Counted from the stretch's first letter, positions 5,241 to 59,181 are shown. The stretch is 64,000 nucleotides of DNA from Saccostrea cucullata (GCF_032062105.1 NW_026940631.1:558001-622000), one strand, 5' to 3'. Notes: generated from the letters alone by a model not told the origin. Numbers and translations: made by a program.

Positions 5241-5531
5241 GTAAGTAAAAAGTCGGAATAGTTTCATAAACTGAAATTATTTTTATACATTGATGTTTTG
5301 TTTAATATTTTTTTTCAGGAAATTATTTTGTAATGTCATAAGAAAATTTTCTATATACTATTATTTTAAATAAGAATAAAGCCACAGATTGTTTTATTAT
5401 TAGGTCATAAAGTTGAATACGCACAAAAGTGCAAACTGAATACATTAGAATTGCTCATTTTATCACGTTTTAGTTTTTAGAAATATCACTAAGCCTTACA
5501 TAAACGTTTAATTGTACTTTTTCAGTCCGCC

Positions 5532-8500
5532 ATGACAATCCTAAAGGGCTGTTTGATTTTCATAGTAATGGGATTAACTCATGGAAACCAGAACCCAATA
5601 TTTAAGGCTAACGGGAATATCCTATGGAAAAGTGACGGTTTTCAGTTTGTAGAAACCACTTCTACAACAGTCGGTGGAACGGCTTCACGATTTTCTACTC
5701 CTGTTCCAGTAGTGAAGGAAAGCATATACTCCATAGCCCCGGAAGATTGGACACGGGTAGGAGACAGTGTGTCAGACTTGAAAAATGTTCATTTAGAATC
5801 CATTGATAACAAAATCCAGAATTTAACGATAAATGAGTCGAAAGCTCGTGCAGATAACAATAATGAAGCGTCTGACGTTAACACCGTATCTCAGACAGAT
5901 AGGGATTCTGTTGCAAGAAGTCTGGAACAACAAAATATAAATATAGTCCGGAATATTAAAAACAGCACAAATGTGATCATTGAAGGTGCCGATATTGTTC
6001 TACAAAAAGTTGATTCAGGCAGTGATATGCTTACAGGAGAAAATTCAACAAAATATTTTATACCTTCCACTACAAGTCCAACACGCAACAGTGATTTAGA
6101 AACCCCAACCCACAATTCAACAAAAACTACTGCTGAAAGCGGTGACAAGTTGAACAGGTTGCTTTCAAGTCCTGGAATAAACGATATCAGCACAACGACC
6201 GTCACATACATTCCTGAAGAGAAAGTGTCCGTTGTAACAGAGACTGTTGATACAACGAGCCCAAGTAAATCACCTTCTTCAGCAGGATCCATTTCTTTAG
6301 ATTCTTTTGTCAACATGCTTTTGCCAAATGAAGTAAAGGATCAAGTAAAAAATAGGGAAGGTTTAAGGAAAGAAGCATTAGAACCAATAAATCCAAGTCA
6401 AACAACACAAAAATCAACCCAGAAGCCAGCAACAGTAGAAGTACCCACATCAAGGGACTCCACAGCACAAGAATTATCATCAATGGACACAACAATTCAA
6501 ACTTCAGTAATTAAAGAATCTACAACACAGGTTCCAACTATACAAGATAAAACAAGACCAGAACAAAGTATTCAAGAGAAAATAGTAAACCAGCAAATGA
6601 TTAAAGATATTGATAAACAAAATCTACCAATTCAAGGGAAAATCCGAAAATTTGGAAACATTACAGTGCCCCATGATGTGATCCTTGAGGGCCCAAATGT
6701 TGGTTTGCAGGAAGTTGTCTCCGAAAATGAAACTATAGAGATACAAAAATATACCACCAAAAGTCCGCAGTCAGCTTTTTCGACAAGTCAAAAACTTACA
6801 ACTGAAGAACTAACCACTCTTGAACCAACAACTTCAAACGCAATCACAACTGAACCATTTACTTCAGAAGCAACAACCCAAGAGCCAAACACTCCTGAAT
6901 CTGCAAATCTAGAACCCACAACTCAAGTTCCAATTTCTAAAGTGCCGACAAGTCCAAAATCAATCACTGAAGAGTTTTTCACTCCAGAACCCACCAATCA
7001 AGTAAAAACAACTTCAGAACCAACTACATATGAACCAACTACTGTTGAGACTTCTGCACAACCAACTACTCTAAAACCTACAACAAGAGAACAAACCACA
7101 TCTGAGCCAACAACGTCAGAACCAACTTCTCCCGTATTAACAACTACAGATAAATTCATTAAGGATACCTTTACTCAGGATACAACTTCTTTTAGACCTA
7201 TCACCTCAGACCCAACATCATCTAAGCAAACTTCTCCTGAGCCAGCAACTCCAGAAAGAATCGCCCCTGAACAAACAACTTCAAAACTAACTTCTCTAGA
7301 ATCTGCAACTAAAATCACTGAAGAATTTATAACTAAAGACTCAACCACACCTGAACCCACAACTCCAGAACCAACCACACCAAAACCCACAACTCCAGAA
7401 CCAACCACAGCTGAACCAACCATTCCCAAACCAACCACTCCTGAACCCACAACTCCAGAACCAACCACACCTGAACCAACAACTCAAGAGCCAACCACAC
7501 CAGAACCTACAACTCCAGAACCAACCACACCAAAACCAACAACACCTGAACCTACAACTCAAGAACCAACTATACCTGAACCAACAACTCCCGAACCAAC
7601 CACACCTGAACCTACAACTCCAGAACTAACTACGCCTGAAACAACAACTCCAGAGCCAACCACACCAGAACCAACCACACCTGAACCCACAACTCCAGGA
7701 GCAACCACAGCTGAACCAACAACTCCAGAACCTACAACTCCAGAGCCAACCAATCCTGAACCAACAACTACAGCATCAACCACTCCAGAACCAACCACAC
7801 CTGAACCCACAACTCCAAAACCAACCACACCTGAACCCACAACTCCAGAACCAACCACACTTGAACTAACCACACCTGAACCAACAACTCCAGAAACAAC
7901 CACACCTGAACCCACAACTCCAAAACCAACAACACCTGAACCCATAACTCCAGAACCAACCACAGCAGAACCTACAACTATAGAACCAACCACACCTGAA
8001 CCAACCACTCTAGAACCTACAACTCAAGAACCAACCACTCCAGAACCAACCACAGCTGAACCTACAACTATAGAACCAACCACACCTGAACCCACCACTC
8101 CAGAACCAACCACACCTGAACCCACAACTCTCGAACAAACCACACCAGAACCAACTACTCCAGAACCAACCACTTCAAAACCAACCACACCTGCACCAAC
8201 AACTCCAGAACCTACAACTCCTGAACCAACCACACCTGAACCTACCAATCAAGAACCAACCACACCAGAACCTTCAATACAAGAACCAACCACACCTGAA
8301 CCAACAACACCAGAACCTACAACTCAAGAACCAACAACACCAGAACCTACAACTCCAGAACCAACCACACCTAAACCTACAACTCAAGAACCAACCACAC
8401 CAGAACCTACAACTCCAGAACCAACCACACTTGAACCAACAACACCAAAACCTACGACTCCAAAACCAACCACACCTGAAACCACAACATCAGAACCAAC

Positions 8501-10956
8501 CACTCCAGAACCAACCACATCTAAACCCACAACTCCAGAACCAACCACACTTGAACCAACCACACCAGAACCAACCACTCCAGAACCAACCACACCTAAA
8601 CCCACAACACCAGAACCAACCACTCCAGAACCAATCACATCTAAACCCACAACTCCAGAACCAACCACACCAGAACCAATCACATCTAAACCTACGACTC
8701 CAGAACCAACCACACCAAAACCCACGACTACAGAACCAACCACACCAGAACCAACTACACCAGAACCAACCACACCTAAACCCACAACCACACAACCAAC
8801 TGCACCTAAAGGCACGTCTACAGAACCAACCACATCAAAACCCACAACTCCAGAACCAACTACTCTGGCACCAACAACTCGTAGTTACATAACTGCTAAG
8901 CCAGCAACTCTGAAACGTGAAACTTTTGAACCAGTAACATCTGTAACAACAACTACTCCCCCACCTCCTCTTGAAAGTATGACTTTTAAACAATTATTAA
9001 TACTTTCATGCTATTTTTTCTCAGTTTTAAATTTTCATACATTTTATTTTTCCTTCTGTTATTGAAATGTGTTATCAAATTTTATTTACAGCTTTGTGTC
9101 AAAATAGCGTTTTTATTGATGGCATCGGATATAACACATATCCAGGACAATGTAACAAAGTTGTTCAATGTTACTTCAACTACGATCAAACAAAAGCAGT
9201 TCTAAGAGAATGTCCAGCTGGGTTATTTTGGCATCAAGATCACGCCATGTGTAAATCGCCAGAAAAAGTGCCGTGTTACGATGGTATGATTTTTTTCCGC
9301 TATATCAAATTGATTTTTAATTTTTTTTTTTTTTTTTTTAAAGAAAAACAACAACAGGAAAAGTTTTTGTAAAAATAATTCTTCTCTACATCATGGTAGC
9401 TGTATACAAGTTTACAATGAATTGTTGGTTCTCTCAATTTTCAGATCAATGTCTCAATATTGGTGTGAATGCCTATGCAAGATCTGGTGGATGTAGGTCC
9501 TATTATTCCTGTGAAGCGGGAATTTCTGTCCCAGCCTGCTGTGATAAGGGATTCCGCTTTGATGGTCAAGGCTGTGTTCCGGACAGCTCTTGCATGGATT
9601 CCTGTGAAACTCCAGACGACTTAAGACGACGAGTAAATCAACAAAGTAAGTATTAAAATTGAATTTATCAGAGCATTTATCATTAAGTAAGTATTAAAAT
9701 TGAATTTATCTGAACATTCCCATATTAACACATCTAAAGAAAAGCTTTTGAGTCTTTTCTCTCTAAATATAGTGTGTAGGTTCCTACCAGATAGTGGCAA
9801 CCCCTATGGATATCTTACTCTAGAGCACAGTGGTCTTCGATTTAGAGCATGTCCATACGGGACAGCGTTTAGTGCCAGTCAGTGTATCTGTACTTGGAAT
9901 CCAACGCAAACCAGATCATACCCACAGCGAGAAGGTATAAATTTATCAAGCTTACAGTCGCATTCATATTCCTTTACAGCCTTAACAGCTTTCTTCAACA
10001 AAATAATTATACAAACTTTATTTCAAAGAATTCTGCTCATTTAATTCCTTTTCTCTCTCTCTCTCTCTTAAACAGTTTGTAAACCTGACTTTAAGATGAA
10101 TTTCGATGGAAACTTGTTCAGGGAACTTTCTGGATCCAACATGGCTTTCTACGTAGAAAACGCAGTTATTCAAAATGGCGCAGCAAAGTTCAATGGAAAC
10201 GGAAAGATTACTTTGTGGGGTTTTATGAACAAAGAACTTGGAGATGAATTTGCTGTTAGAGTTAGGTTCAAGCCACTCCAGACAGAGGGAGGGTACGGGA
10301 TGCTAGTTTCTAACTGTGGATATGAAGGTCTACCAACAGTAGAAATCTCTATGCAGGATAAAAAAGCGAGACTGGTAGCTAAAAGTTTGCATTCCAATTC
10401 TCCATCCATCTTAGAATATCACATAGTCGTAAGTATTTATTATTACATCTAAAACGGTTTTGTTTTATTTCATTTCAATATATTAAGAAGGAAACCGAGT
10501 AGGAATGAACTAGAATGCAAAAATATATTTCACAAGTTTTTCTAAATTCTTTATTTAAATTATGCAAAGGAAAAGCCCACTGCACAAAATTATTTTATTT
10601 CAAGCCATATGAATGGAATGAAATATCATATCACTACGATGGCAATACGTTTACTGCTGAAGTAAATGGGTACAGCATCTCAGAGAAACTTACTGGAGGA
10701 ATAGAGACGAGCTCGAACCCGATGTTTATAGGGGGCTGCCCCAAACCCGGTTCTGGATTCAATGGTTTAGTAGATAATGTAAGTATATGGATATTTCTAA
10801 ATTCTCTATGTCTTTAACTTTTCTATGTCAAACAAAGCAAATTTCGAAATATTTTCTTAGCTTTTACTTATACAATAACAGCTTCTACAAAAGAATGATT
10901 TTTTTCAGGTTGAAATTTACAGCAATTGTGTTCCTTCAAATTTCCTACAAAACTAG
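5532..10956 (+). CDS. Secreted mucin-stalk protein with three chitin-binding type-2-like Cys modules and a C-terminal LamG/ConA-like domain (Pif/BMSP-like), about 1524 aa. Coding exons 5532-8976, 9092-9283, 9445-9645, 9773-9934, 10076-10428, 10605-10778, 10909-10956
   Basis: Kozak-like tccgccATG and a signal peptide (MTILKGCLIFIVMGLTHG). All introns are GT-AG and join in frame (4575 nt). Cys modules include CNKVVQC..RECPAGLFWHQDHAMC, CRSYYSC..ACCDKGFRFDGQGC and RACPYGTAFSASQCIC. LamG-like segment: CKPDFKMNFDG..AKFNG..WNEISYHYDG..MFIGG..FNGLVDNVEIY. AATAAA at 11188. Confidence 0.88.
7344..8870 (+). repeat. Coding 15-bp minisatellite encoding roughly 100 PTTPE/PTTPK pentapeptides
   Basis: Units such as ccaaccacacctgaa and cccacaactccagaa are visible directly and the frame is never broken. 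Confidence 0.97.
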
Positions 10957-11325: not shown

Positions 11326-11387
<62 letters not shown>

Positions 11388-11651
11388 TGTCGTCGTTGTC
11401 GTTGTTGTTGTCGTCGTTGTCGTAAACTTTTCACATTTTCATTAAAATGCCAATTTCAACCAAATGGCACATTTTTTATAACGTCCTTTTATACATGAAT
11501 TTGTAAAAAATTAATGGCATTTTTCAAAAATCTTCTTCTCCAGAACCGCTGGGCAAGGAAAGATTGGAAGCAAGGTAGTGTAGATTCAAATTTGTTCAAA
11601 TCATTCAAAATGGCCGACCCAAGTTTTACACAGGAATATATAGGAAAAATC

Positions 11652-11686
<35 letters not shown>

Positions 11687-12122
11687 GAAAGATGAAACTC
11701 ATGTGGAATCATCCTTAGGTAGTGTAGATTCAAATTTGTTCAAATCATGACCCCCGGGGCAAGGGTGGGGCCAAAAACCTAAGTTTTTAGGAATATATAG
11801 GAAAAATCTTTAAAAATCTTCTTCTCCAGAACCACTATATATTGGAATCATAGGTAGTGAAGATTCAAGTTTTAAAACAACGAAATTAGGAATATATAGG
11901 AAAAATCACACTAAATTATTTTTGATGATTCAAACAAAACAAGGGTGGGGCCAAAATGGCCGACCCAAGTTTTACATAGGAATATATAGGAAAAATCTTT
12001 AAAATCTTCTTCTCCAGAACCACTAGGCCAGGAAAGATGCCATGTGGAATCATCCTCAGGTAGTGTAAAATTTGTGCAAAATGGCTGACCCTAGTTTTAC
12101 ATAGGAATATATAGGAAAAATC

Positions 12123-12156
<34 letters not shown>

Positions 12157-12300
12157 GGAAAGATGAAACTCATGTGGAATCATCCTCAGGTAGTGTAGAT
12201 TATCAAATCATGACTCCCGGGGCTAGGGTGGGGCCAAAATGGGACAGTTTTACATAGGGATATATAGAAACCTTTTAAAATCTTCTTTTCAAGTACTTCA
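11326..12300 (+). mobile_element. Second HINE/satellite copy, internally scrambled and 3'-truncated
   Basis: Same 5' head (tttttagctcacctgagccgaaggctcaagtgagc) and fragments of the same units. Confidence 0.75.
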
Positions 12301-12949
12301 AAGCTATGATTTGTGATATTTATACTTTTTATTATTTGTGCAAATGATGAAAAGAGATGTTATTTTCTCTTGTTATTTCTTATATTATTATAAGAATAAT
12401 ATTTTTTATAATATAGTTCTTATAACACTCTGTATGAATTAGTCTGGACATTTACAGATCATGCATTTATTAACTTTTTATTAGCTAAAAGAGATTATTT
12501 TCCTTGTTTCTTAAAAGATTAATTAAATTGGAATTCTAAAGTTACCAATTTTATAAACTCAAACCATTAGGGGTAGTATAGAGTTCGTTAATTCAGGCAA
12601 CAAATTAAATTTTGAAACACTCGTCAAGTAAATTTCATTCTGAATTGAATGAAATAATATACCAGCAGTTGAAATATAAATATATAATTATTATCGTTAT
12701 AAAGTTCATTAGGATATGTATGACCTGGTCCTTTTCATACATGAATGCATATTTTTGATTTTAGCTCTTAAATGCCGAAAGTAGTTTTCCTAGATGGCAA
12801 CTTAACGTTATACATAATATGTACTAGGTATACTAGTGTTCGTTTATTTTCAAAACTGAAAGGCTTTTAAAACAAGGAACAAAAATCAAAAAAGAAACTT
12901 TGGTAAAAGACGTGATTTTAGTTTGCGTTCTTTCTTCAATGTAAAGAAA

Positions 12950-14879: not shown

Positions 14880-17800
14880 ATGGCTAGACATTGTATTGAC
14901 AATAACATAAAGAAGTTCAGAGATTTTACCTTTCTTCTTTTATTTAGTAAGATGCTTCAAGGTAAGATTAACCATAAATTATGTTCCTATCATTTTGGTT
15001 TTTTTAACTGCATCATCCTCAGGAAATTTAACTAGACTATGTCATTAAAGCATGAATCGGTTAGAAAGAATAAATCTCAAAACTGCAATAGGGTGTGCAG
15101 ACAAATTGGGTAGCGTCCATTAGCGGATTACGAAATATATTTACATTCCACATGTATATAACATGCATATATAGTCTGTGGAAAGCTACACATTCAAAAC
15201 ACCATGACACGGATAGAAATAAAGCAATCGTTTTATTTTGAAGGCACAACCGTTCAAAGGCGTGGTGGTACAACGTCATGAGCGAAAATTAAACCTCATC
15301 ACATTAAACAGAAGCTGATGAGATGGATCTTCCATTAAATGTAATTAAAAAGGAGGATAATACAGCGATTTTGGATATGAATATGCAAACAAAATTTTCA
15401 TAGCGCATTACTCAATTTGTTCGCACACACCGGTGCAGTTATGAGGTTATGTCTTTAAAAAAAATAACGAATCAATGCTTAATTGTTTGCATTTATCGTT
15501 GAAGTTATGAGATTTTATTTTTCCAAAAATAATCATCCAATGCTTATATTTTTATTTTTAAACTCTTTTCCTTGACTGCAACGTGATGACTTTAACTTTT
15601 CTATCGTCAACTGTCCTTACTTATGCGCAATATACCTTCATCACCTGCATATGGGGTTTATATATCTCATTTGAATCGATACGCATAAGTACGAAAGCCC
15701 AGAAGGCTCATTCGAGACATCGAAATGAACGAAATTTTCGAAAACGAGGATCCAAATTAACCAATCAAAAGACAGGTTCAATTTTGATTACTCCCCTTTA
15801 TTATGTTTTACTATCAAGAAATCGTTGAATATATTTATATAAAATGGGTCATTTGCTTAAATGATAATGCAAGAAAAAAAGATACATGTATTAAAACGAA
15901 ATAAAAAGGAATTTTAGGTTACATTTTAGAAAATATATATAAATTCTTATTTTTCCTCATTAAACAAAACAATAGATACGTATATAGATATATTATATGG
16001 TCTTATCGTTGAATTGCGCAATTCTTAAGTCGACATTTTTTTTCTAATAAGAACATTGATGAGGGAGATATTATTTACATGAAATAGTAATGAGGGTACA
16101 TTTTTTGCCCCCCCCCCCCAATAATTTTGCCGATATATAAACTACTATAGAAATCATAACTACTATATGCTTGCGCCCCCTCAATTTTGTGCCCCCTCTA
16201 TAAAAAACATCTGATGACTTTTTTTGCTTTGATTTTGGTTGTCAAGAAATTTTTGGTAGTAGAAAACTGAACATGTATGGCTGTGCATGAAATGAGCATA
16301 GTGGTTTTACTAGTATATTTGAGTCTTTGACCAAGTCGGGCGAGACCCGAGTGGTTTCCTTTTAAGTAATTATCGTATCGTAATTATCGCATTATTGTAT
16401 CTATGCATCGCAAGATTGACAATGAATGTTGATAACCACACATTTGCCCCCCCCCCCCCCACTTGGCCATTCCCGTAATATTTTTCCGATATAATATACT
16501 ATATAGAAAACAGTAACTTTATTTTTATGTCCATTCAAAAATAACTTCCAAATACCATGATAACCCCTATTTTTCGAGGTTTGATAGGGGGATTAACAAT
16601 GATTTTTTTTTTCAAATTTATTATTTCCAAGGGTCATTATCTTTATTAAGCATGCATGTTTCAGCCATCCGTATTTAAGGGGCTGTTTATTGGTTTCATA
16701 AACTTGGTCACTGGCCACTTTCTAATACCGTGTCACAAACACTGTCCACCTTGAAACCCGTAGTACTAATTATTACAGAGACGAAGCATCGATTTTGAAA
16801 GTGGGATAAGGGGGGGGGTACAAAAATATTATTTCAAACCTGAAAATAAAAACTGACAGAAAAAAATTGTCCAAACCCGAAAATCCTATTTCGGGGCGTG
16901 GAAGGGGGCGGGGAGGGGGGGGGGGGGAAAGAACTTCATTTAGTACCTAATTTCTTTTAATACACCACTACTTAAACTTCTTTGAATATACTGCACCACT
17001 GTAGCAAAACGTAGGGGGAGGGGGGGGGCTTGGCAACCTACCTTTCGATGAACATTTTCAATGGTAAAAAAAAATTATGTTTTTACTGTTAATCTATTTT
17101 AAGGTTACTATCATGTCAACAACCCTGTATATCCAAAGTAGATAACACGAAATATATATATTCTTTAAATAAATCTCTTATGACATTTAAGAAGCTATTA
17201 TAAATTAATTAAGCATATCTTGCAGACCAAAATCTGATATTTCTTTAAATTTCGTTTTGATAATATATAACACTTTTTCTTGCGTTGTAATTTAATCAAA
17301 TGACCTCCTCGGTATTAAAATATCAACGATTTCTTAGTAAAAAATAATAAAGGGGAGTAATTGAATCTCAAACCGCCTTTTGATTGGTTATTTTAGATCT
17401 TGAATCTCGAAACTCGAATTTTGAATCTCGAATTTCGAATCTCGTATTTCGAATCTCGAATCTCGTATTTCGAATCTCGAATCTCGAATGAGCCTTCTGG
17501 GCTTTCGTACATAAGCATACTCTACATATGAACAATTTCTAAAACGAGGTAAATTAGTGACAAACAAATTGTTGAAACAAGAATAATAATTCGTAAGTTC
17601 TACGGTCGATACAATGACCTTGTCAGCAAATACAATACTAGTATCTCATTAAGTCAAATGTTGACTGACGTTTTTCCTACTAATTGTTAGTCCATTATTT
17701 TTTCCCATTATTTAAACACTGAATTGACGACGGATTTTTCCGTTATTTCCCGATCATGACAAGGAGCACACAGCGGGTGTGACCGATCGGCAGGGGATGC

Positions 17801-20490
17801 TCAATCCTCCATGGCACCTGATCCCATCTCCAATGTTTTGGAGGTCTGTGTTTGCTCTACTCCTATTTTGTATTGTTTTATGGACTTTAGATCTGAATAC
17901 TGTTCGTTATCTCCATATGTTTCATTCAAAATCCTGGCATTATCCCTCTGGTAAGCTACAATTAAAGGAAGTGTGCTATTTCAACAGAGTCTGTTCAATG
18001 AGAGCGTGAATTTTACATTTCGCTTTTCGCTTATAACGCTTTGAAAGTTTGTGACGTAATTTGGTATTTTGAATGCTGTAGATAGCTTGCTACATTTAAG
18101 CAAAATAGATATTATATGGAATGTACATGTAAAAAAATAGCATATCCCAAACTTAGGCGTTGTCCTCCAAATGTACTCTTCTTCTTATTCGAATATCAAA
18201 AAAAGAAAGCACAATGATTATACAATTTGAAAAAAAATAGTTGTTTTTTTGCCCAAAATGTTCTCAGTGTTAAAATCGAAATTCCCAAATCACTTACAGG
18301 AATTATTTCAATGTATAAATGGGTTACTGAAGGGTTCAAGGAAGATGGGGGTTTTTTGGTAAAAAAAAACAAAACGACGTTTTAAACCTCCTTTTGGTCC
18401 CTTGGTCCCTAGCTAATCTACAGGACATAACTAAGTGTATTCTGAAACTTGAATGGCCTACATGTACTGCAAGAAATGTATGAGAAATTTAAGGAAACAT
18501 TTTTGTTAAAAAAAAAGAAAAACATTGTTTTGTGACCTCAAGGTGAGTATTTAAAAACCCAATTCAATCATCATAATATGAACGGACAACTGCCGAAAGC
18601 GTAAGATCAATTCAGAAAACCAGTTAGGTTTCGTAGGGAAAAAACAACACTGTTTAAACATTTATTTTTACTCAGGCTTGTCATCATGTTTGAAAATGAA
18701 AATTTAAATCTCTATTTATTTTTCGAAAGTTATATTATAATCATTAAAAGATATTAAACAAAACAGAAAAGTATTAAATTGATTATAAAAATATTATATA
18801 TCTTTTTTTTTTTGCTAAACCTTATTTTTTTCCTTTGTAGTATTTGGATCGCTTCATAATCTCCCCTGCCGCAGGACCGTGGATATCTATGGGTATGATA
18901 TACAGTGTCAAACCAACCACTCTATTTACATTGTAAGTCACGTGATAGAAGATGGATTCCAGAAGCTATCGCCACTTGACAGATTATTTGGATGTGATGT
19001 TAAGAATGCATTGGTATGTGGACAACATTACCCCATTAACTCAACAATCTCTGAGGACTCGGCCATCTTCAAGCGCGCAGTCAGCACCTGCAATGGAAAG
19101 AACATGTGTACGTTGAAAAAGAAGTATTTTGAAGACAGTGAGAATTTCTTTCGAAACGATTGTCCATCTCTTAAGAGTTATCCAAATGCGATGGTTCGTC
19201 AAAGTATTGAATATGAATGCATACAAGGTACGTTTAAACAATTTGTTGACAATATTTTTCTTTTAAATAAATAAATGAAAGAAAATATTGCATATGATGC
19301 TTGCAACTGAAGTATGTTTGCATCTGGATTAAAAAAAATTATGATCAAATCTAAAATTGATTCTCTTCAGAAAACGAGAGATCTGTCATCGATATGTGTA
19401 AATATCTAAATGTAAGTCGCAACGGAAACGTTTATATGAAGGCCAAGGGTCCAAATAAGATTTGCAGGTGTGAAATACAGGGGGTTGTCTCCGGATTGGT
19501 AATTCTGAGTTCCTACAAGACAATCATCACGACAAACCAGCGGTTCCGAAATCCTCCCGAAAGTAAGTAATTTTCTGTATAATAAAGTAGCTTAACTGCA
19601 CATATTGCATATTGAATAAGTTGAATTGCTGAAACTTTTTTTAAAACAGAGAAAGAAGCTGATATAGTATACGGACGTCATTTGTCGATAAGAACTGACC
19701 GTCTCTCCATTACTGTGAACTTGACATCTCTGGAAAGTATGATTTTTCTGAAAGTATTAATTGAAGGTATGTTGAGTACACTAATTTTTTTAAAAAAATC
19801 TTATAAGTTATGGCAATAATAGATTTAAGATATTGAAAAGAAATCAAAAATTAATAATAACGGCTGAAGGTGAGTTCGTATATCACTAGCTTTTATAGTA
19901 CATATATTTAAGTTATTTAATTTTTTTAAAGTATTCAATTTTTTCTTTACTTTACCTTGATGCAGAAAAAGTCGTACCTCTCGTCAGAGCAGAATCCATG
20001 GTCTTTATAACTGAGGCTCCGACTATCGACACAACCAAAATAAGTATAGAGGGAAACTACACCAAGACTGGATTTCTTAAATCACTGCTCTCTACAACTG
20101 GGTCAGCTGATTTGTCACATAATGTCCAAGTCAGTACTGACTTTGGAACTGACCAAGGTACTCGATAAACGTGACAGAAATGCAAGGAAAAGGTCAAAAT
20201 TATGTTCAGTAAATTATAAAGTCTGTGATATGCTTTGATAAGATGGACATGAAAGAATTTTAAATTAATTCATATTTACTTGAATGTTTTATAGGGCATT
20301 TAGAAGTGTTTAGGACAATTTACACTCTGTCCCTTCGTATTTTTTCATATTCTAGATAATCATGGGTGGTTGGTTACAGGTATTATTTTAGTTTTTCTCG
20401 TTGTTACACCTCTTTTCATCTGGAAATTGAAACCTCGAAAAAACAAGTAAGTATTGTTTTATTTGTACTATGAAAAACATATACAATCTC

Positions 20491-20542
<52 letters not shown>

Positions 20543-20856
20543 GGAAAGCTTAATAATGAATTGAAAAATTTGATAACCTAAAGTAATTTTCCCCCTTTCA
20601 TTTTGAGGATTAAGTCCACAGAAACTTCCGATAATGGAAAGATAGGGAAAATTTGACATCAGTGGAGAGCAGAGGAAAGGAAAAGATTCACTTGCAAGCA
20701 TCAACTGAAAAGCCACAAGAAGTTGTGTACACAAGCCTCATTACACAGACTGATCGTGTTACAAGTTATGATGAACCCGTTCTCTTTACATTGCCACCAT
20801 ATAATAAGTATATTGAAGTTCTTCCAGATTTGAACTGGACCACAGAGAAAATTTAA
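14880..20856 (+). CDS. Receptor A: type-I membrane protein (SUEL-like domain, second Cys domain, stalk, TM, ITIM-like tail). Exons 14880-14961, 18841-19227, 19371-19562, 19650-19766, 19966-20157, 20356-20446, about 20646-20856
   Basis: Signal peptide ..FTFLLLFSKMLQ|VFG with a TATA near 14850. 8-Cys exon ending QSIEYECIQ. IDMC..CRC exon. 117-nt exon 4 as in the paralogs. TM WLVTGIILVFLVVTPLFIW. Tail motifs VVYTSL, YDEP and YIEV. The last acceptor is uncertain: the stronger AGs at 20607-20621 lead to early stops. Confidence 0.72.
15575..17925 (+). mobile_element. Penelope-like 3' fragment split by the TIR element
   Basis: RDDFNFSIVN..IPSSPAYGVYIS remnant on the left and its continuation from 17510, including the gtgaccgatcggcaggggatgctc..ggcacctgatccc motif. 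Confidence 0.7.
15690..17509. mobile_element. 1.8-kb non-autonomous DNA transposon with TIRs and a 6-bp TSD, inserted into a Penelope-like fragment
   Basis: TIR tacgaaagcccagaaggctcattcgaga / tctcgaatgagccttctgggctttcgta. CATAAG at 15684-15689 and 17510-17515. Subterminal (TTCGAATC)-like repeats. Confidence 0.82.
20487..20540. repeat. (CT)n microsatellite
   Basis: Seen directly in the last intron of receptor A. Confidence 0.95.
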
Positions 20857-22548
20857 AAGTGAAAATTAATCAAATTTCAGTTCAAATGATTTTTTTTTTT
20901 GAAATTGTGAAATAAATGAAATAATATTCTATATCGATGCGAGGTTGCATGTGTTCTACCTCATTAAAGAAATGACATGAATTCGAAAACCCGATATTTT
21001 GTGACGCACAAAATCCTTTTCGAATGGAAGAAAAAGACTCAGTTACTATATACATGTATATCATGTTGATTAAACTTTCGTGGGAACAAAAGATCATGCC
21101 CTAAATCAACGCGAGGAATAGGTATACATGTATTTATTATATCAAATTTAACATACTGTATTATTGGATGAACCATTTGGAATAGCTATATATATGTACT
21201 ACCGGGGAAAAAAAGAGTGCACAATGCTGAAAGACTTCGATTGCTTAATTGTTATTATTGGATTTAAAAAAAAAAAACCTGGTATTCACATAAAACATAA
21301 TAAAAATATCGTAAGCATACGTTTTGCTGGTAAAAACTGCAAATAGCTCTTTAAATTCATACTCCTTAGAGATACAAGTGATTGGGTCTTCTGTGTTACG
21401 TGTAGATGTCACCTAAAACTGCCTTATACTTTTGATCAGGGGAAAATCAAAATAAATGCTATAGTTTATTTTCTATCTATTTGCAAAAACAGTTATAAAA
21501 ATCATCTCTTTAAAATTATAATTATATTTTTCTACTCTATAATTTCTTTTTTTATTTAATTCTAATATATTATCATTTTAAAAAAATTGCATTAAAAGAT
21601 CTAAATAATTCATTTCTGTATGGAGAATATTGGTCAAGCTGTATTGACTGACTATTTCAAATTCAACTAACAAAAATTAAACCAATCAGTTAACTCCCCT
21701 TATTTATGTTGCAATATACCATTATCATTTGCATATGGAATTAATGTTTCCCACTTAATTTGATACACAATAGTACGTTCTACATACAAACACTTTCTAA
21801 AACAAGGCAAGCTATTTACAAATAAGTTGATGATACAGAAATATCAACCATCTTGATTTAGCTCAATATTTCACAAAATCTATGGTCGATAAAAACACAT
21901 AGTCTTCTTCATGATGGATTGTTTCGGAGGTCCGTGTTTGCTCTGCTCTTATTTTGTATTGTTTTATGGATTTTGAGATTGAATACTGTTTGTTATCTCC
22001 ATATCCTTTCAATGATATTTAAGCATCAGAATGATTGATTACGATTAGCAATTAACCCCTTTCACTATTTTTTAAAACTGTTTCTTAACAAAAAAGCGGT
22101 GAAATAAAGGCCACAAAAGGTATAAATGATCATTTAAAAAGTATTTTGCGTCATATAACATTTTCCCACATCACTTTATTATCTTAAATTGAGTGATGCT
22201 TTATGACAAAGTTCGTGGAATCGTTCAACATCTGATATAGAAATGATCTACAATTTCCTCTTTTCAACAAGTTTAAATTATTTGAAAGTCAAGTGATGTC
22301 AAAGTAAGGTGCAAATATCAAGGAGTTATTCGGCAATTGTAGAGAGAACAGCTGGTACTTGAACGCGATCTTTTATTTCGGATTTAGACTTAATTTCCAC
22401 GCGTGGTTGGAACCTTTGAAATCTTCAAAGCTGACAAATTTGTATAGAGGTCGCATGTATAGTACCCCCGAAGCTGTTTCTATTTTAAAAAAGTCATTAG
22501 ACTTATTTTAGAGGTATTGAAGGGCGTTACATGTATTAGTGACTGACG

Positions 22549-25500
22549 ATGCTGCACACTTTGGAATTTATCATACTGAACTTTCTTTTGAATTTCAAAG
22601 GTACAGTATCATGATTTTTCAGCACTGTTTCCAATTGATCACATTGGATGTGGATAACCCAGCAAGGTTTCTCTTTTTCACTGTCATCTATCTGTATCTG
22701 CTTTCTAAATATTTATCAAATCTCATTCTATTAATATGTTTAAAAAACAGCTATCAGATTTTACAAAGTAGAAATAAATTATTTATTATTGTTGTATTCT
22801 ATTAGATGCCACACTTCTACTCCGTTTCACAAGACCAAGAAAATTATACTTGGAAAAAAGTTTCAAGTTTGCTTTTCATTTTGATTTAAATTACTGAATG
22901 GGTCATTTTTCTGAATGCTTTTATTCATTTTTTCAAAATTCATTCAAGATGAACATATTGATAAATTTTTTGTCGTTTGATTTTTGTATTTAAAGCTGAT
23001 TGTACCACGCACAGCTCCCCTTGTTTGGAAACACAGTACTGGAAAAAGTACGAAGTTCGATGTTCCGAGAATGAGACGATATATATAAGACAGCACAATA
23101 TTGGAGAAAGCTGTCAGGAGGAAGTTTTGGGATATGATGAAAAGAAAGTAAACTCTTGTAGTTACTCCTTACCGCTCAGTAAAACAATCACAGATTACCA
23201 GACACCATTTACAAAGACTGTAAATAAGTGCAACGGCAAAAGGGAGTGTGTCCTGTTCACGGATTACTTTGAAAAAATTGAATCAGAGAATGGCGCTTTA
23301 TGCAGAAACCCGAATACGTCAATATTTCAGCGAATAGAATATGAATGCATACCAGGTATTCCTAAACGACAATTTCTCATAACAATGATAATGTATAGCA
23401 AAAACCTAAAAATTTATCCTCTAAACTATTTTAATTTTTTTTTACAGATGTCTACGTAGTAGATAACTGTGTAAGAGAAGTGGACGTGGATAATCAATCT
23501 GAACTTCACGATATATATCTACGCTTTTCTGTGATGAATAGAAATCATTCTTGTCTTTTGATTGGCGAGCTATCAGGAATAGAAATTTTACATACCTACA
23601 GTTCTGTTTTGCGCCTACTTTACCAAAACCATCCTGTTTATGGTGAGGCTTCTTCAATTACAAAAGGGCTGATTTCGACTTCTACAGCAAACTTCAACTT
23701 AATAAATAACAACTTGAGAGATAAAACATGAATACTAGATTCTATACAGATAAGTCAAACTGAAATTTTCTATATCCGGATTCTTAAGATTGTAAAATAA
23801 AAATAAAACACAAACACACAATCACCTGTACACAATTGCATCTCAAAATTTATATTTACGCAACACTAAAATTCATTGAAAACATTTAATTTTTTTTTGC
23901 TTTTACAGAACACTTAGAGTCCAGTATTGGTTTGTATGGGGTGCAAATTTCTATACAGACAATTGGTCTTGTTCTCGAAATGCAAGGATTTGATTATAGT
24001 AGCATTACATAGATAATATATAAAAACTAATTGGTAAGTTGTTTTAATAGTTTATTACAACAATCCTTACATGGAAAAACGATTTCAGTGATTTTATATT
24101 TACATGAACATTGTTGAAGTCACCTTTGAAAAAAAAATACTTTTTCGGATATATCTAGTGAGAAAAATTTCAACCCGGCAATTTTTCAATTAGTAGAATC
24201 CTAAGTCATGATATATCTTTTAAAAATTAAGGAATTAATTGAATATAATCCATTGTAATTTTTATATTAATATGCGTATTTACAGAATAAAGGAAAAAAG
24301 GGGGTTTTTTTTTTGTACACTTTGTTGTGGAAAAAACCGGGTTTTTCTTTCGAGTTATACATGTAAGCGATAAATTTAATTTTTCGAAGAACATTTGGAA
24401 AGCAACGTTTTTCAACAAAGGATTATTTATTGTGTGCCTAACAAAAATTATTTTTTTAACTTTTGAATTTTGATATCTTTAAAAAGAAAAAGACTTTGGG
24501 ATATAAATTGACAAAAGTTTAAATAATTTATGGACAATTATTTTTCAAGAAGAAAAACGAATATATTTTTTAGCGATTAGAATCGGACCAAGCGGCTTTA
24601 AATGAAGCTTATTCAGTTACTAGTATATAAGGGCTGATTTCTCCTCCTACACCAAACATCAGCTCGATACATAACAACCCAAGAGATAATACATGAATAC
24701 TATGAATCTGTACAGATAAGCCAAACTGAAATTCCCTGTATCCTGAATACTTAAGATGGCAAAATACAAAAGAGCACCATCACCTGTACACAATTGCATC
24801 TCGAAATTATCTGATCATATATAAATTGTTAACTTTAAGAGTTCTTTTTTTTTTTGCTTTTACAGAACACTTAGAGCCCAGGATTGGTGTATTTTTAACA
24901 ATACAATATGAAGTTATATTTCGAAATGCAAGGGTTTGATTATAGTAGCTACGTACTTGTAAAACTTCTTGGTGAGTTTTAACTATTCTGACTAAGAAAG
25001 TTCTGTCGAATGGTTTGAAATTTTATATATTCCTTTCAAAGTACATGACATTAATAATTTTTTAAATATTTTATTTATATGCTAGTGAGAAAAATTTCAA
25101 GCGGCACATTACATGTCGGACCTTTTCATGAAAAAACTGAAACTGCCAAAGGTTCAGGTAAAGGTAGAGAAGTCGATTCTAGTACCCTAATGCTAAATTT
25201 AAAAAAAAAATGCTATTTGCATTTTTAACACCTGGTTTCTCTGTCATTTTCTTTTCCAGAAAATTTGGAAATTAACGTTTTTCACTGGATTCTCACTGTA
25301 TTTGCTGCCATAATAATTCTACTGGTATTATTTTTGATCTTCCAACGGAGGTAAACTATGATAAATTAATTAGATATTCAGTCATCGAGCAAGTAAAGTG
25401 CTACTATTTTAGTAATCAGTTGAAGAAGAGAAATTAATTTGTTTTCCCTTATTTTACATTTCGTGGGGTCAACACAATTACAGAACATATATGGGTTTTG

Positions 25501-26130
25501 ATTTTGAGAATTGACAAGCATAATTGAAGAACTAGACATTTACATTGAAATGTTCTGATCATAAATGTTTACTTTTTTCCTTTGCGTCTTATACACCCAG
25601 TTGTTCTATTTTTAAAAGTGAATATGAAGTTACATTTCCTTTTTAACTTGTAACAAAACATATTCAGTTTTCTTGATACTTTTTTTTTTCATTTTTTGTG
25701 ACATTTGCATTATTAATCGTTTAAACTAGAAATATTTCTTTAAAAGTGGGTTTCAAAATTCTCTAAATACATGTAGTAATTTTTAAATTTTTATTTTACA
25801 TCAGTTATATGTTGTAGTTGATGAAAACAACAATTTGTATTTCATCAGCATCAATATTTTAAAAATATTATAATTTAAGTGTGACAAGAATTTTAAGACA
25901 CATACTTCCAGTTAATTATATAGTCCACATTGATCTTGAATTTTAGAACTGAGTTAAGTGATGAACTATCTTTTACTAAAAGTTTAATATGTAATGATCT
26001 TTTTAAAAAGATAACTTACAACATTGTTCTGCCTTTGAAAACTCCAACACAATTAATTATTAGAGAAATGCCAAAAATTGACATTTACATAGAAATTGCC
26101 AGTGGTATTACAAAATGTTGTTATCAATGA
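22549..26130 (+). pseudogene. Receptor B: divergent paralog with a duplicated exon 4, both copies disrupted. Exons 22549-22600, 22996-23355, 23448-23642, 23909-24033 and 24866-24971, 25086-25157, 25260-25350, 25947-26130
   Basis: 52-nt signal exon MLHTLEFIILNFLLNFK, homologous to C/D/E. SUEL-like exon (CNGKREC..QRIEYEC). TM WILTVFAAIIILLVLFLIF. Tail ITYNIV and YIEI, joined in phase 2. The exon-4 copies are 125 and 106 nt, each with an in-frame stop. Confidence 0.68.
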
Positions 26131-27289
26131 AATATATAGAGAAAAAACAAAATGTTCTTCACTTTTGGCACACAACTGTAGTTCTGTCATAATCCACGTG
26201 TGTGGTTCTTGCGACAAAGCATTTCTTTATGTATCAAAATATTTAACTTCTTGGTCTTGACCTTGGAGTCTGAGCAAATTTTGCAAGAATTTGCCTAGCT
26301 TTATCCTTGGTCATAAAGTTTGAACACATGGTGCTATGGAATTCATGCTTCACGTGTATATTCATTGTCATTAGACCTTACATTGATATAAATATCTTTA
26401 ACTTTTGTTATTGGTAAACTTTTAAAAATCTTAAACCTTGGATATAGCTTTTGAACAATGATTACTAGAACCTTCATACTTTACATATGTATTCCATGTG
26501 ACAGTGACCTTGACCTTGGATTTTGACCTACTTTACAAAATTTTTCCTTGACCATAACCTTTAAATAGTGCTAAGAGTTCATACAAAAGTACAAGTATAT
26601 TTATTAAGAACAATTCTTTTCTTTTGGGTAACAACATTAAATTAATTCCTTGACCTTGGAGTTTCATTTGCATTTCAAAACTTCACCTTTGCCAAAAGTT
26701 GTCATACGTAGACATCAGTGTTTCACAAACACATCTTTTTTTGATAAATGTAATGCAATATAAGTTAATTGTGTAACTCCCATCGCATCATGTCTTGTAT
26801 AAACATATTAGAACTGTAAATAATGTTTCGTAATGGATGAGTCCATAGAGATTTTTTTTCCCTGGAATCAATGGTTCTAAAAGAGAACTCACTTAGAATT
26901 TACAAAATAAGCATTGTCCTTAACTTTGAACTAATTGGAACAGGTGTAAAAAAAAATATCTATTTTCGCTTGCATATAGATTCAGGAAATAAAGTGAAGT
27001 TGCATATGATCATATAAATCAAAGTCTAAAATTTCATAGAAATCCTTACAAAGACTAATTAACGATCAATTAAGCGGGTCCCATTAAATTTTCTACCGAT
27101 CCTATTTTTACTCCTACTCATTCAGAAAGTGTTGGACTTTTAAATCCTCTTCACATGACAAGGAAGATACCGTAATTGTTATATATAAATAACGCATATA
27201 TTTATATTATATATTCAAAATACGTTTTCCATTTTTTAACATTAATGTGATTTGCATGCAATAATTTCATCAATTTGATAAATAAAAGG

Positions 27290-52900: not shown

Positions 52901-53534
52901 AAGCCATACACATTTTTTCCAAGTAACAAAACATGGACACGGCCATTACACATGTATTCATGACATTATGTGAGACCAGGGGTATCATTTAGTGAGCTCA
53001 TTGCTCACAGTTCCTCTAGTTCTTTTTTAACATTGTAAAACTTATTAGGCGTTGTCTTTTCATTCATAAATAAACGTGCATGCATTCATTTTATATGATA
53101 GCATTTTTAGTTGGTCATCTTATTCTGAATGAGAAAATATCACTCAATAAAATTCTTTTTATCGTATTCTAAAATTGTAAACATATACACGTGTTTTTTA
53201 CAGAAAGGACAGAGATCTTCTCTTGGCAATTCTTCACAAACTAGAAGAGAGTGATCAAAGCGTTCAGGAGGAGCAACACTCCAAGACGACGGAGACAAGC
53301 CACATTCAGAGTACAGAAAGTAAAAAGAACTACCAGGAAATCCCATTGCAGTTCTTGAATTGTCCAAAGACCAAGCATCTCAGTAACCCTGTATACGAAA
53401 GTTCAAGTCAGGAAAATGTTTCATCTGAAGAGCAACATGTCGAGCTTTCAATGGCTGGCTCCATGGATGTGCAGAGTGGCCGATTCCTTTTGGAGAGTGA
53501 CAATGGAATCTATGAATTGCAAAAAAGATTCTGA
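43937..53534 (+). CDS. Receptor E: ectodomain nearly identical to C, with an unrelated TM and an NPxY-containing tail; frameshift in the stalk exon as assembled. Exons 43937-43988, 49088-49468, 49559-49741, 49945-50061, 50474-50606, 50894-50968, 52583-52673, 53204-53534
   Basis: Signal MYHTIGIIVFILIVDIQG. TM LFSSLFLFLGGVVLLVIFFLLLSVI. Tail NYQEI, NPVY and GIYEL. The stalk aligns with D only after a 1-nt shift near 50500-50518. Confidence 0.78.
44840..45922 (+). mobile_element. Helentron-associated non-autonomous element (HINE/pearl-like) with an internal tandem satellite of about 165-bp units
   Basis: 5' ttttagctcacctgaatcgaagactcaagtgagc, a (GTC/GTT)n microsatellite, repeated catcctcaggtagtgtagattca..tcaaatcatgaccc units, and 3' caggtgagcgatgtggcccatggg. 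Confidence 0.8.
46213..46386. mobile_element. Tc1/mariner-type MITE
   Basis: TA-cagtaaaactc..gagttttattg-TA with internal ttcgttata repeats. Confidence 0.65.
46900..48300 (-). mobile_element. Penelope-like retroelement fragment (RT C-terminal part and 3' region), interrupted by a TRIM
   Basis: Peptides MGTNCAPLLADLF..FRYVDDVLSINN and KLYDKRDDF..IVNFPYLCSNIPSSPAYG..SQLIRYARAC. Assignment to the Penelope-like group is from recalled family motifs. Confidence 0.75.
47323..47729 (-). mobile_element. TRIM (non-autonomous mini LTR retrotransposon) with tRNA-derived LTRs, Helenus-like
   Basis: Two 141-bp direct repeats (47323-47463 and 47589-47729) bounded by TG..CA. 4-bp TSD TTCA. On the minus strand: PBS-like TGGCGCAAACGTTGGG, PPT AGAGGGGGAC, and tRNA-like A/B boxes in each LTR. 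Confidence 0.88.
50090..50423. mobile_element. Short TTAA-flanked TIR element in intron 4 of E
   Basis: ttaaggtcagat...atcttaccttaa; absent from the homologous intron of D. Confidence 0.55.
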
Positions 53535-57247: not shown

Positions 57248-59181
57248 ATGTCATGTGTAAATGATGCAAATATAGGTGAGTTACGAGAGTGCTTTTATAT
57301 TTTTTTTTTATCTATCTATTTTTTAATTTTAATTATTTTTAATAAATTGACATTGTCTTTGGTGTTGCAATTACTGCTATTATTTGAAAGCAGTTATGCA
57401 AGCCCATGATACTGATTTGTATAAGCCTAACGATTGGGTTAAACAAATCTGCAGCGATTTGTTCAAGGGTCTTGAATTTACTTCTATATCAGGATTTTTT
57501 TAGAATGTTGATTGATGAGTTAGAGAAAGATTTCGGTTCTGATACTATTTCTCTAATGTCAAGAATTTAAACTAAATTGTGACTGTTATCTTATAAGTCA
57601 CCCCGACTTAATAATTTTATCTTAGAATTGTGTACAGACTCAAGTCAAAGATTATTTTTTAAAAATACCTGTTTTCCTTTGACAGAGAAAGATGTGACGG
57701 CATTGGTGGTATTGTCCGGAATTCAGACGTTTTTCTGTGTGACAATCATAGCTTCCATTGCAGTGCTGGCTTTGTATATTCGGTATATACGCATGGGAAA
57801 TCCTACTGTCCTCCGCAAAAATTTTGAATTTTTCTACTTAAATCTTTACATGACAAGACAATGTTTTCAATACTAATTTTGTAGGGGACACTGCTCTACA
57901 ACAGCAGTAAACATGCGTTATTCCCTGCTTTCACTTTCTCATATCTCTGAATTCTTTGAAATTTTTATATCGTTATGATACCATTTCTTGATGTAATCAT
58001 AATAAACAGATTTTTCTACATCGAATTACCATAACTTACCAGAAAAAGAAGATAATCAGTGTCTCTCTTTATTATCCTCGCCTTTTACATTACACGACAG
58101 AAAACAGAAGACTCTTTTCACAAATAAAGAGATATCTCTCAGGGAGAAAGAGATTCTCTTTCACCTAGAGAGATATCTCTCTTATAACAAGAGATATTTC
58201 TCTAAATATAAGAGATATCTCTCTTAAGTTGGGAGATATGTCTGTTTTTTAAGAGATATCTCTCTAAAATGAGAGATATATCTGTAATTTTAAGATAAAT
58301 TTTATTTTCCTAATAAATAGCAAAAGGGCTTGCCATACCCAGAGTTGCGAAGTAAGGAGCTGACTTTTAGGAGTGGGTTCCAATTCACTTCGGGACGTAG
58401 AGATCGTTCTTCGAACATGTCGAATGAGGCAGTATTTATTATTTAAACCGAGGCCCAATAGATGTTGACACGAAAAAGAATCATCATTGCTCAATGGCCC
58501 TAAGTGTCGAGCATAGGTATAAATTTGCAGCCCTCCACCGGCTAGTGGTGGCGTCTCCAAAAGAGTTCTAGAAATGGACGTTAAGCCATGAACAAAGAAT
58601 CAACTCCTTACTCTCTAGAGCTGACGCTCTAACCACTGCACCACGCAGTAATGACTAATTTACTAACTACATATATGTATGCCAGTTTTAACAAGAGAAA
58701 CTCAAAAGATTACAGAGGGATATTTTAACCCAAATGTACACAAACTAAATATATCAAATTTTCACATGATAATATGTTTAAACGTATGTTTTCTTATCTT
58801 TTACACTACAGCCAACAGTTACTGCTGCTTCAAAATCTGATGAGAGCAATTTTACTTCCGATGACGAATGAAGTAATTGAAAAAGACTGCAGAAAAAGTA
58901 ATGAAATAGACACGATAAAAGACCCTGATACGGTCAATCACGTGACCGCAGCGGAAGAGCAATCATTTCCTGTGACAGATCCAGTCAAACTTATCAATGA
59001 TATCGTCCAACCGGAAGGAACCAGGAAAGAGTGCAAATCAGACAGCGAGCTGTCAATCAAAAACAGGTTAATTCTATTGTCAAAATTACAGGCGGATCTA
59101 AAAGACAAAGTGGTGTACGAAAGGTGTCGTCTTCCTTTTGAAAATATTGACAATCTCAATCAATTGCTGGAGAAAAAGTAA
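57248..59181 (+). CDS. Putative small single-pass membrane protein, about 164 aa, with a very short N-terminus. Exons 57248-57275, 57686-57782, 58812-59181
   Basis: ATG exon with a gtgagt donor, a hydrophobic exon VTALVVLSGIQTFFCVTIIASIAVLALYIR, and a phase-2 join into the 135-aa ORF. An alternative micro-exon at 57885-57906 would give an early stop. Confidence 0.5.
58126..58336. repeat. Second, shorter copy of the AGAGATATCTCT 21-bp array element (about 8 units)
   Basis: Same core and terminus (aataaatagcaaaagggcttgccata) with different spacers. Confidence 0.8.

What the first reader, a model, noticed from the sequence alone, without database searches (positions are those of the whole stretch)
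14880..53534. Five-gene tandem cluster of SUEL-like type-I receptors with different tyrosine-motif tails: candidate paired immune-receptor locus
Seen: five same-strand paralogs share one exon plan (signal exon, 52 nt in B-E; 8-Cys exon; DMC/CxC exon; 117-nt exon in A, C, D, E; stalk; TM; tail; phase-1 introns throughout and a phase-2 last intron). Their tails carry different phosphotyrosine motifs. Known: clustered receptors with similar ectodomains and ITAM versus ITIM tails define vertebrate paired-receptor families (KIR, LILR, Siglec, Ly49). Inference: this is an analogous bivalve system built on a SUEL-like fold. I do not recognise a described family with this architecture.
Basis: partly seen in the sequence, partly recalled or inferred. 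Interest (0 to 1): 0.92.

Follow-up and report, generated by a model that had tools for sequence, protein, structure and literature searches.

The report
Oyster same-head, two-tail receptor pair
Oysters of four genera keep two neighbouring cell-surface receptor genes whose outer lectin-like heads are repeatedly copied to match each other while their inner signalling tails stay different, the genetic signature of vertebrate paired immune receptors, although ligand and signal direction are untested.

Summary
The five-paralog cluster is real (Saccostrea cucullata; RefSeq 'uncharacterized'). Only D has a clean reading frame here; B is decayed, and A, C and E carry frame lesions. The proposed ITAM (C/D) versus ITIM (A/B) pairing fails: the ITAM spacing is Saccostrea-specific, B's ITIM is not orthologous, and A's SUEL domain is only 47% identical to D's. 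The real pair is D-type tail versus E-type tail. Both tail classes occur in Saccostrea, Ostrea, Magallana and Crassostrea. In six assemblies of five species a D-tail gene and an E-tail gene share a near-identical head (about 94-100%), against 44-54% across genera; an E-tail clade is rejected (AU p=2e-4). Two C. virginica assemblies carry heads 72% alike at one E locus, each matching a D-tail gene of the same assembly. This is domain-restricted concerted evolution, as in vertebrate paired receptors. Opposite signalling, immune role and ligand are inferred, and no RNA run was available. The scan has noted similar same-head, two-tail pairs on other DNA of this genome.

The parts
14880..20856 (+). 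Gene A (RefSeq LOC134255806). Exons 14880-14961, 18841-19227, 19371-19562, 19650-19766, 19966-20157, 20356-20446 (TM), last exon from 20608 (or 20646). ITIM-type tail (VVYTSL, YDEP, YIEV) sits downstream of a 1-nt frameshift in this assembly; intact in S. echinata.
22549..25552 (+). Gene B (LOC134255807), decayed. Exons 22549-22600, 22996-23355, 23448-23642; exon 4 in two out-of-frame copies (23909-24033, 24866-24971); TM exon 25260-25350; 31-nt remnant of the tail exon at 25522-25552. Orthologues carry a D-class tail.
27290..35674 (+). Gene C: head matched to E, D-type tail. Exons 27290-27341, 31550-31930, 32021-32203, 32407-32523, stalk exon from 32610 (4-nt deletion, stop 32759-61), TM 33481-33574, tail 35422-35674. 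RefSeq splices C head exons onto D's stalk, TM and tail (LOC134255778 X2, X3).
38192..42949 (+). Gene D, intact 457 aa (LOC134255778 X1). Exons 38192-38243, 38926-39312 (SUEL-like), 39410-39595 and 39785-39901 (CUB-like), 39988-40272 (end of CUB, stalk), 40436-40529 (TM), 42697-42949 (D-type tail). 5' half E-like, 3' half C-like: an older unequal-crossover product.
43937..53534 (+). Gene E (LOC134255808), E-type tail. Exons 43937-43988, 49088-49468, 49559-49741, 49945-50061, 50474-50606 (out of frame as a whole; 50474-50509 or 50520-50606 in frame), 50894-50980, TM 52583-52673, tail 53204-53534 (DxxxLL, YQEI, NPVY, C-terminal YELQ).
31408..32544 (+). Homogenised tract in C (exons 2-4 with introns), 93.9% identical to E 48948-50082; flanks fall to 60-68%.
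48948..50082 (+). Homogenised tract in E, partner of C 31408-32544.

Best explanation
An oyster-family (Ostreidae) pair of type-I receptors, SUEL-like + CUB-like head, stalk, TM, kept as one D-tail and one E-tail gene. SHOWN: both tail classes predate the split of four genera; in each assembly examined the E head is sister to a D-tail head, as separate genomic copies with 1.1-1.8 kb shared tracts, so heads are repeatedly homogenised (gene conversion or unequal crossing-over) while tails keep their orthology; heads differ strongly between assemblies of one species while tails do not. INFERRED: the two proteins bind the same fast-changing ligand (probably not rhamnose) and give different outputs. 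The D tail keeps two YxxL/V motifs 19-23 residues apart, which fits a tandem-SH2 phosphatase (SHP-2 type) better than Syk, so D is the likelier dampening member. The E tail keeps YQEI (Src-type SH2), NxxY (PTB), a C-terminal YxxQ (STAT type) and a dileucine signal, so it is the likelier activating or internalising member. An immune recognition role is inferred by analogy only. A (ITIM) and B are older side members outside the homogenised pair.
For: Head identity D versus E within an assembly: S. cucullata C/E 94%, S. echinata 100%, O. edulis 99.6%, M. gigas 94%; C. virginica SUEL 99% and 95%; across genera 44-54%. Tails: same class across genera 28-56%, D versus E 15-32%. Separate genomic copies: S. 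echinata 1.76 kb at 96%, M. gigas 1.7 kb at 92% (inverted), O. edulis 1.45 kb at 93.5%, C. virginica 1.18 kb at 95.5% (inverted). Tree: six D+E sister groups, all starred or identical; E clade rejected p=2e-9 and 2e-4, D clade p=2e-6. The C. virginica D partner was predicted before the search that found it. One E locus, two assemblies: SUEL 72% but tail 97% in C. virginica; 75% and 95% in M. gigas. O. edulis exons stay 97-99% alike across an intron that is about 48% alike. A and B, equally close, are not homogenised. Folds. A complete E-type transcript exists in an oyster-derived transcriptome (GAHX01003535.1). Same pattern defined for vertebrate paired receptors in PMC3210942.
Against: No ligand, expression or signalling data; no RNA run listed for this genome. 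Neither tail has a conserved canonical ITAM or ITIM, and no conserved charged TM residue was seen. Pooled D/E head differences show no excess of synonymous changes over orthologues (25:30 against 48:56, p=1; only S. echinata plus O. edulis do, 11:1, p=0.004, post hoc). Orthologue dN/dS of heads is 0.22-0.29, no positive selection overall. The assemblies of origin of the older C. virginica and M. gigas proteins were inferred from record names, and allele versus paralogue is not proven; no D partner was found for the second M. gigas E head. In this assembly the matched D-tail copy (C) is frame-broken.
Confidence: 0.5

Rival explanations
1. Shared ligand, but signalling receptor plus clearance or decoy partner, possibly outside immunity (adhesion, guidance or reproduction, as for EVA-1, latrophilin lectin domains or spermadhesins). 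E internalises the ligand, D signals.
For: E tail keeps DxxxLL and NxxY motifs; closest folds are adhesion and guidance domains; left neighbour is a chitin-binding mucin-like gene.
Against: E also keeps YQEI and a terminal YxxQ; strong between-individual variation of the head with fixed tails is unusual for developmental receptors.
Confidence: 0.2
2. D and E are subunits of one complex or a homophilic self-marker system; heads must match within a haplotype to dimerise or to recognise self (cells or gametes).
For: Within-assembly matching of divergent head types; head-to-head layout in Magallana and Crassostrea suggests shared control.
Against: The dimer prediction gave no answer; layout is tandem in Saccostrea and Ostrea; no allorecognition phenotype is tied to the locus.
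Confidence: 0.15
3. Neutral by-product: neighbouring paralogues convert wherever they still align; tails are too different to convert; no functional pairing.
For: Tracts include introns; pooled synonymous:non-synonymous ratio equals that of orthologues; PMC3210942 itself notes homogenisation may be a default.
Against: It persists over synonymous distances of 1.3 or more, in tandem and inverted layouts, across a large intron insertion, while A and B in the same array escaped; both tail classes are retained in every genus.
Confidence: 0.15
4. One reading: five working receptors, C/D activating through an ITAM and A/B inhibitory through ITIMs.
For: YxxL-x8-YxxL in C, D and S. echinata D; VVYTSL conserved in both Saccostrea A genes.
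Against: Middle Tyr absent in Magallana and Crassostrea; B decayed and D-class in orthologues; A's SUEL domain 47% to D's; four of five copies have frame lesions here.
Confidence: 0.07

Closest known systems
Vertebrate paired receptors with domain-restricted homogenisation (KLRC/NKG2, Ly49, PIR: PMC3210942; Siglec-5/14: PMC4042635; Siglec-11/16: PMC5701461; CEACAM: PMC5112662)
   Same: Linked genes; tail classes older than the species; ligand-binding exons homogenised after speciation; stalk and tail spared.
   Different: SUEL+CUB head, not Ig or C-type lectin; mollusc; no canonical ITAM/ITIM contrast or charged TM; opposite signalling and shared ligand not shown.
SUEL / rhamnose-binding lectin domain proteins (CSL3, SUL-I, latrophilin lectin domain, EVA-1; PF02140)
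   Same: Fold (Z 5.6-6.2, top eight all SUEL-type), eight Cys, N-G-K-x-x-C core.
   Different: Far below the Pfam cut-off (12 bits against 31); YGR, DPC and KYL motifs absent from the domain; followed by one CUB-like domain and a Tyr tail.
CUB-domain proteins (cubilin, spermadhesin, TSG-6, Kremen, neuropilin)
   Same: Second module matches CUB folds, Z 7.5-8.0, rmsd about 2.5 A over about 92 residues.
   Different: No Pfam CUB hit; 6-16% identity; shorter.
Invertebrate Tyr-motif receptor families: Hydractinia Alr (PMC9546547), Botryllus FF/FcoR (PMC12582321), oyster ITIM receptors CgNCAM1 and IgIT (PMC11841013)
   Same: Clustered or single receptors with ITIM, ITAM or hemITAM-like tails in invertebrates.
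   Different: All Ig-superfamily; the Botryllus paper does not mention gene conversion or concerted evolution; unrelated head.
Biomphalaria GRC and PTC2 clusters (PMC7494358)
   Same: Mollusc clusters of hypervariable single-pass TM genes.
   Different: No matched-head, two-tail pairing reported in the passages read; those loci have a mapped resistance phenotype, this one has none.

Membership tests
Paired receptors (works-like test) | Linked genes with highly similar ectodomains | tested here: met
   D-type/E-type heads about 94-100% within assemblies; not met for A or B
Paired receptors (works-like test) | Post-speciation homogenisation limited to the ectodomain, tails orthologous | tested here: met
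Paired receptors (works-like test) | One member with conserved ITIM, the other with ITAM or charged TM residue | tested here: not met
   ITAM only in Saccostrea; ITIM consensus in D tails only in some species; E tail has neither; no conserved charged TM residue
Paired receptors (works-like test) | Opposite signalling output | not testable with these tools
   needs cell assays
Paired receptors (works-like test) | Shared ligand and co-expression on immune cells | not testable with these tools
   no RNA run listed
SUEL/RBL lectin family (PF02140) | SUEL fold with eight Cys | tested here: met
   pLDDT 89 model
SUEL/RBL lectin family (PF02140) | Pfam gathering score | tested here: not met
   12.2 bits against 31.4 for A, none for B-E; weak match to CSL2, E 0.0015
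SUEL/RBL lectin family (PF02140) | YGR, DPC, KYL sugar-site motifs | tested here: not met
   absent from the SUEL domain of all 20 heads; the two matches in A lie in the CUB part
CUB domain | CUB beta-sandwich fold | tested here: met
   top nine structural matches all CUB-bearing, Z 7.5-8.0; Z is near the tool's caution line
CUB domain | Pfam CUB sequence match | tested here: not met
ITAM receptor (D type) | Conserved YxxL/I-x6-8-YxxL/I | tested here: not met
   x8 in Saccostrea, x11 in Ostrea, absent in Magallana and Crassostrea

The most novel reading that the evidence does not exclude
Oysters run a polymorphic paired-receptor locus in which divergent head alleles are maintained in populations and copied onto both a dampening and an activating tail on the same haplotype: an independent invertebrate origin of the vertebrate paired-receptor design, on a SUEL-CUB scaffold, that sets recognition of a pathogen or of self.
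Probability: 0.35. Interest if true: 0.88.

Novelty: new variant of a known kind. Interest (0 to 1): 0.72.

Why it matters
Matched-head, different-tail receptor pairs are a central design of vertebrate innate immunity, and their homogenisation has been documented in vertebrates. A case that recurs in five oyster species and varies between individuals makes it testable whether molluscs evolved the same design independently, and gives a small, mappable candidate locus for disease-resistance work in farmed oysters. All members are annotated as uncharacterised and none of six tested gene ids appears in the searched papers.

Tried and rejected
Head dimer prediction: no answer, score 0.00, not evidence either way (one search was a format slip). 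Pfam on exons and full proteins: nothing above cut-off. Positive selection on the head: not seen, dN/dS 0.2-0.4 for orthologues. Selection for protein-level identity of D/E heads: inconclusive. Gene-model artefact (one head, alternative tails): rejected, separate genomic copies in four other species. B's ITIM-like tail: rejected. Related tail exons on contigs C2747 and C12834 showed no SUEL-CUB head nearby. Paper searches found no description of this family. My own joined models were built only inside scripts; the joined-model search step was left out, and searches used single exons by reference or stored database proteins by id.

Full report
Observation. Five 8-Cys exons lie at 18841, 22996, 31550, 38926 and 49088 on the + strand. 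Exact database matches identify the genome as Saccostrea cucullata, with RefSeq models LOC134255806 (A), 807 (B), 778 (C+D) and 808 (E), all 'uncharacterized'. No further copy of the exon was found in the genome. The window has no N.

Integrity. Only D is a clean frame (457 aa, identical to RefSeq X1). A lacks one base in an A-run of its last exon compared with S. echinata, so the RefSeq protein ends before the ITIM; this could be an assembly slip. B has two out-of-frame exon-4 copies and only 31 nt of its tail exon, which is real decay. C has a 4-nt deletion and a stop in the stalk exon; RefSeq isoforms splice C's head exons onto D's stalk and tail. E's stalk exon is out of frame but can be bypassed by either of two in-frame sub-exons. 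No RNA run was listed. D is E-like upstream (76-77%) and C-like downstream (73-79%), as expected of an old unequal crossover; S. echinata has A, B, one D-type gene and E.

Fold. The first domain folds confidently (pLDDT 89) and its top eight structural matches are all SUEL-type (Z 5.6-6.2, next 3.8). It fails the Pfam cut-off and lacks the rhamnose-site motifs, so a sugar ligand is not implied. Exons 3, 4 and the start of 5 form a second domain whose best matches are CUB domains (Z up to 8.0). The architecture is signal, SUEL-like, CUB-like, stalk, TM, tail.

Range. A profile search of 1.84 billion proteins gave 22 hits; every named hit here and is an oyster (Saccostrea, Ostrea, Magallana, Crassostrea), apart from one transcript filed under an oyster parasite. 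That record, 98% identical in its SUEL domain to an M. gigas protein, is a complete E-type coding sequence and shows splicing in M. gigas. More distant bivalve relatives may be missed.

Two tail classes. D-type tails share a juxtamembrane module ending H-x-A-x-C-x-C, then Y-[TE]-[PS]-L and a last YxxV/I 19-23 residues later. The middle Tyr that makes an ITAM exists only in Saccostrea (x8) and Ostrea (x11). E-type tails share KDR-x-LL, Y-Q-E-I, N-x-x-Y and, in all but one, a terminal G-[VI]-Y-E-L-Q. B orthologues have D-class tails. A keeps VVYTSL in both Saccostrea species, but no full-length A was found elsewhere.

The main result. Heads follow the assembly, tails follow the class. D/E head identity is 94% (S. 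cucullata C/E), 100% (S. echinata), 99.6% (O. edulis) and 94% (M. gigas; SUEL 100%), against 44-54% across genera, while D and E tails are 15-32% alike. The copies are separate in the DNA: 1.14, 1.76, 1.45 and 1.7 kb tracts at 92-96%. After finding a C. virginica E gene I searched for its predicted partner and found a D-tail gene with a 99% identical SUEL domain, head-to-head as in M. gigas. A second record of the same C. virginica E locus, apparently from an older assembly, has a head only 72% alike but a tail 97% alike, and its head matches another D-tail record at 95%. M. gigas E records likewise differ by 25% in SUEL and 5% in the tail. The variable sites cluster in the N-terminal half of the SUEL domain. 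In the tree, six D+E groups are sisters and monophyly of either class is rejected. A and B group by orthology and are not homogenised. Fossum and colleagues (PMC3210942) define this pattern for vertebrate paired opposing receptors, and also caution that homogenisation may be a default where nothing resists it.

Mechanism. Shown: recurrent copying of head exons between a D-tail and an E-tail gene over synonymous distances of 1.3 or more, in tandem and inverted layouts. Shared ligand, opposite output and immune role are not shown. Protein-level selection for identity is inconclusive.

Known context. Oysters have ITIM receptors that work through phosphatases (PMC11841013), and Hydractinia and Botryllus have clustered Tyr-motif receptor families (PMC9546547, PMC12582321), all Ig-based. 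Snail GRC and PTC2 are polymorphic TM clusters with resistance phenotypes (PMC7494358). I found no paper on this family or on matched-head pairs in molluscs in the searched library, which lacks most subscription journals. Earlier notes of this scan describe similar same-head, two-tail pairs with EGF or C-type-lectin-like heads elsewhere in this genome (unchecked here), so the pattern may be recurrent in oysters.

Method notes. My joined gene models were used only inside scripts; the joined-model search was left out, and searches used exons by reference or stored proteins.

Verdict. Real, undescribed family; a new variant of the paired-receptor kind by its evolutionary signature, with function still open. 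Interest 0.72.

Noticed in passing
window 5493-10449 (+): Left neighbour: a very long Pro/Thr-rich repeat exon followed by chitin-binding peritrophin-A domains (PF01607) and a probable LamG-like module; resembles oyster shell-matrix proteins (own knowledge).
   Followed up: partly
G000:C2747:395035-398480 and G000:C12834:39465-39644 (L014-L016): Other loci carry exons with the same D-type juxtamembrane H-x-A-x-C-x-C module, one with a YESL motif, but no SUEL-CUB head was detected nearby; the tail module may be reused on other ectodomains.
   Followed up: partly
L007:3239-3874 (S. echinata gene B): The B tail carries an internal repeat expansion that multiplies a C-S-Y-D motif before the terminal YTPL and YIEM motifs.
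   Followed up: no
window 27290-42949: RefSeq merges C and D into one locus with isoforms that join C's head exons to D's tail; if real, this restores an E-matched head on an intact D tail.
   Followed up: partly
L008 and L010 (O. edulis): Layout B, D, B, then E further on; a second D-type protein (99% head) is on record, suggesting a recent duplication of a B-D block.
   Followed up: partly
window 61623-62948 (-): LINE-type reverse transcriptase frame (PF00078).
   Followed up: no
window 57666-59178 (+): Right neighbour, a small gene without Pfam match, syntenic with a 169-aa S. echinata gene next to E.
   Followed up: partly
window 44840-45800 and 11327-12324: Copies of a tandem-unit interspersed repeat also found in S. 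echinata, one inside intron 1 of E; 144-bp direct repeats at 47322 and 47588.
   Followed up: no
row 3, structure row 1: A mollusc C1q-domain cluster whose other part resembles this SUEL-like domain in shape (TM 0.58).
   Followed up: no
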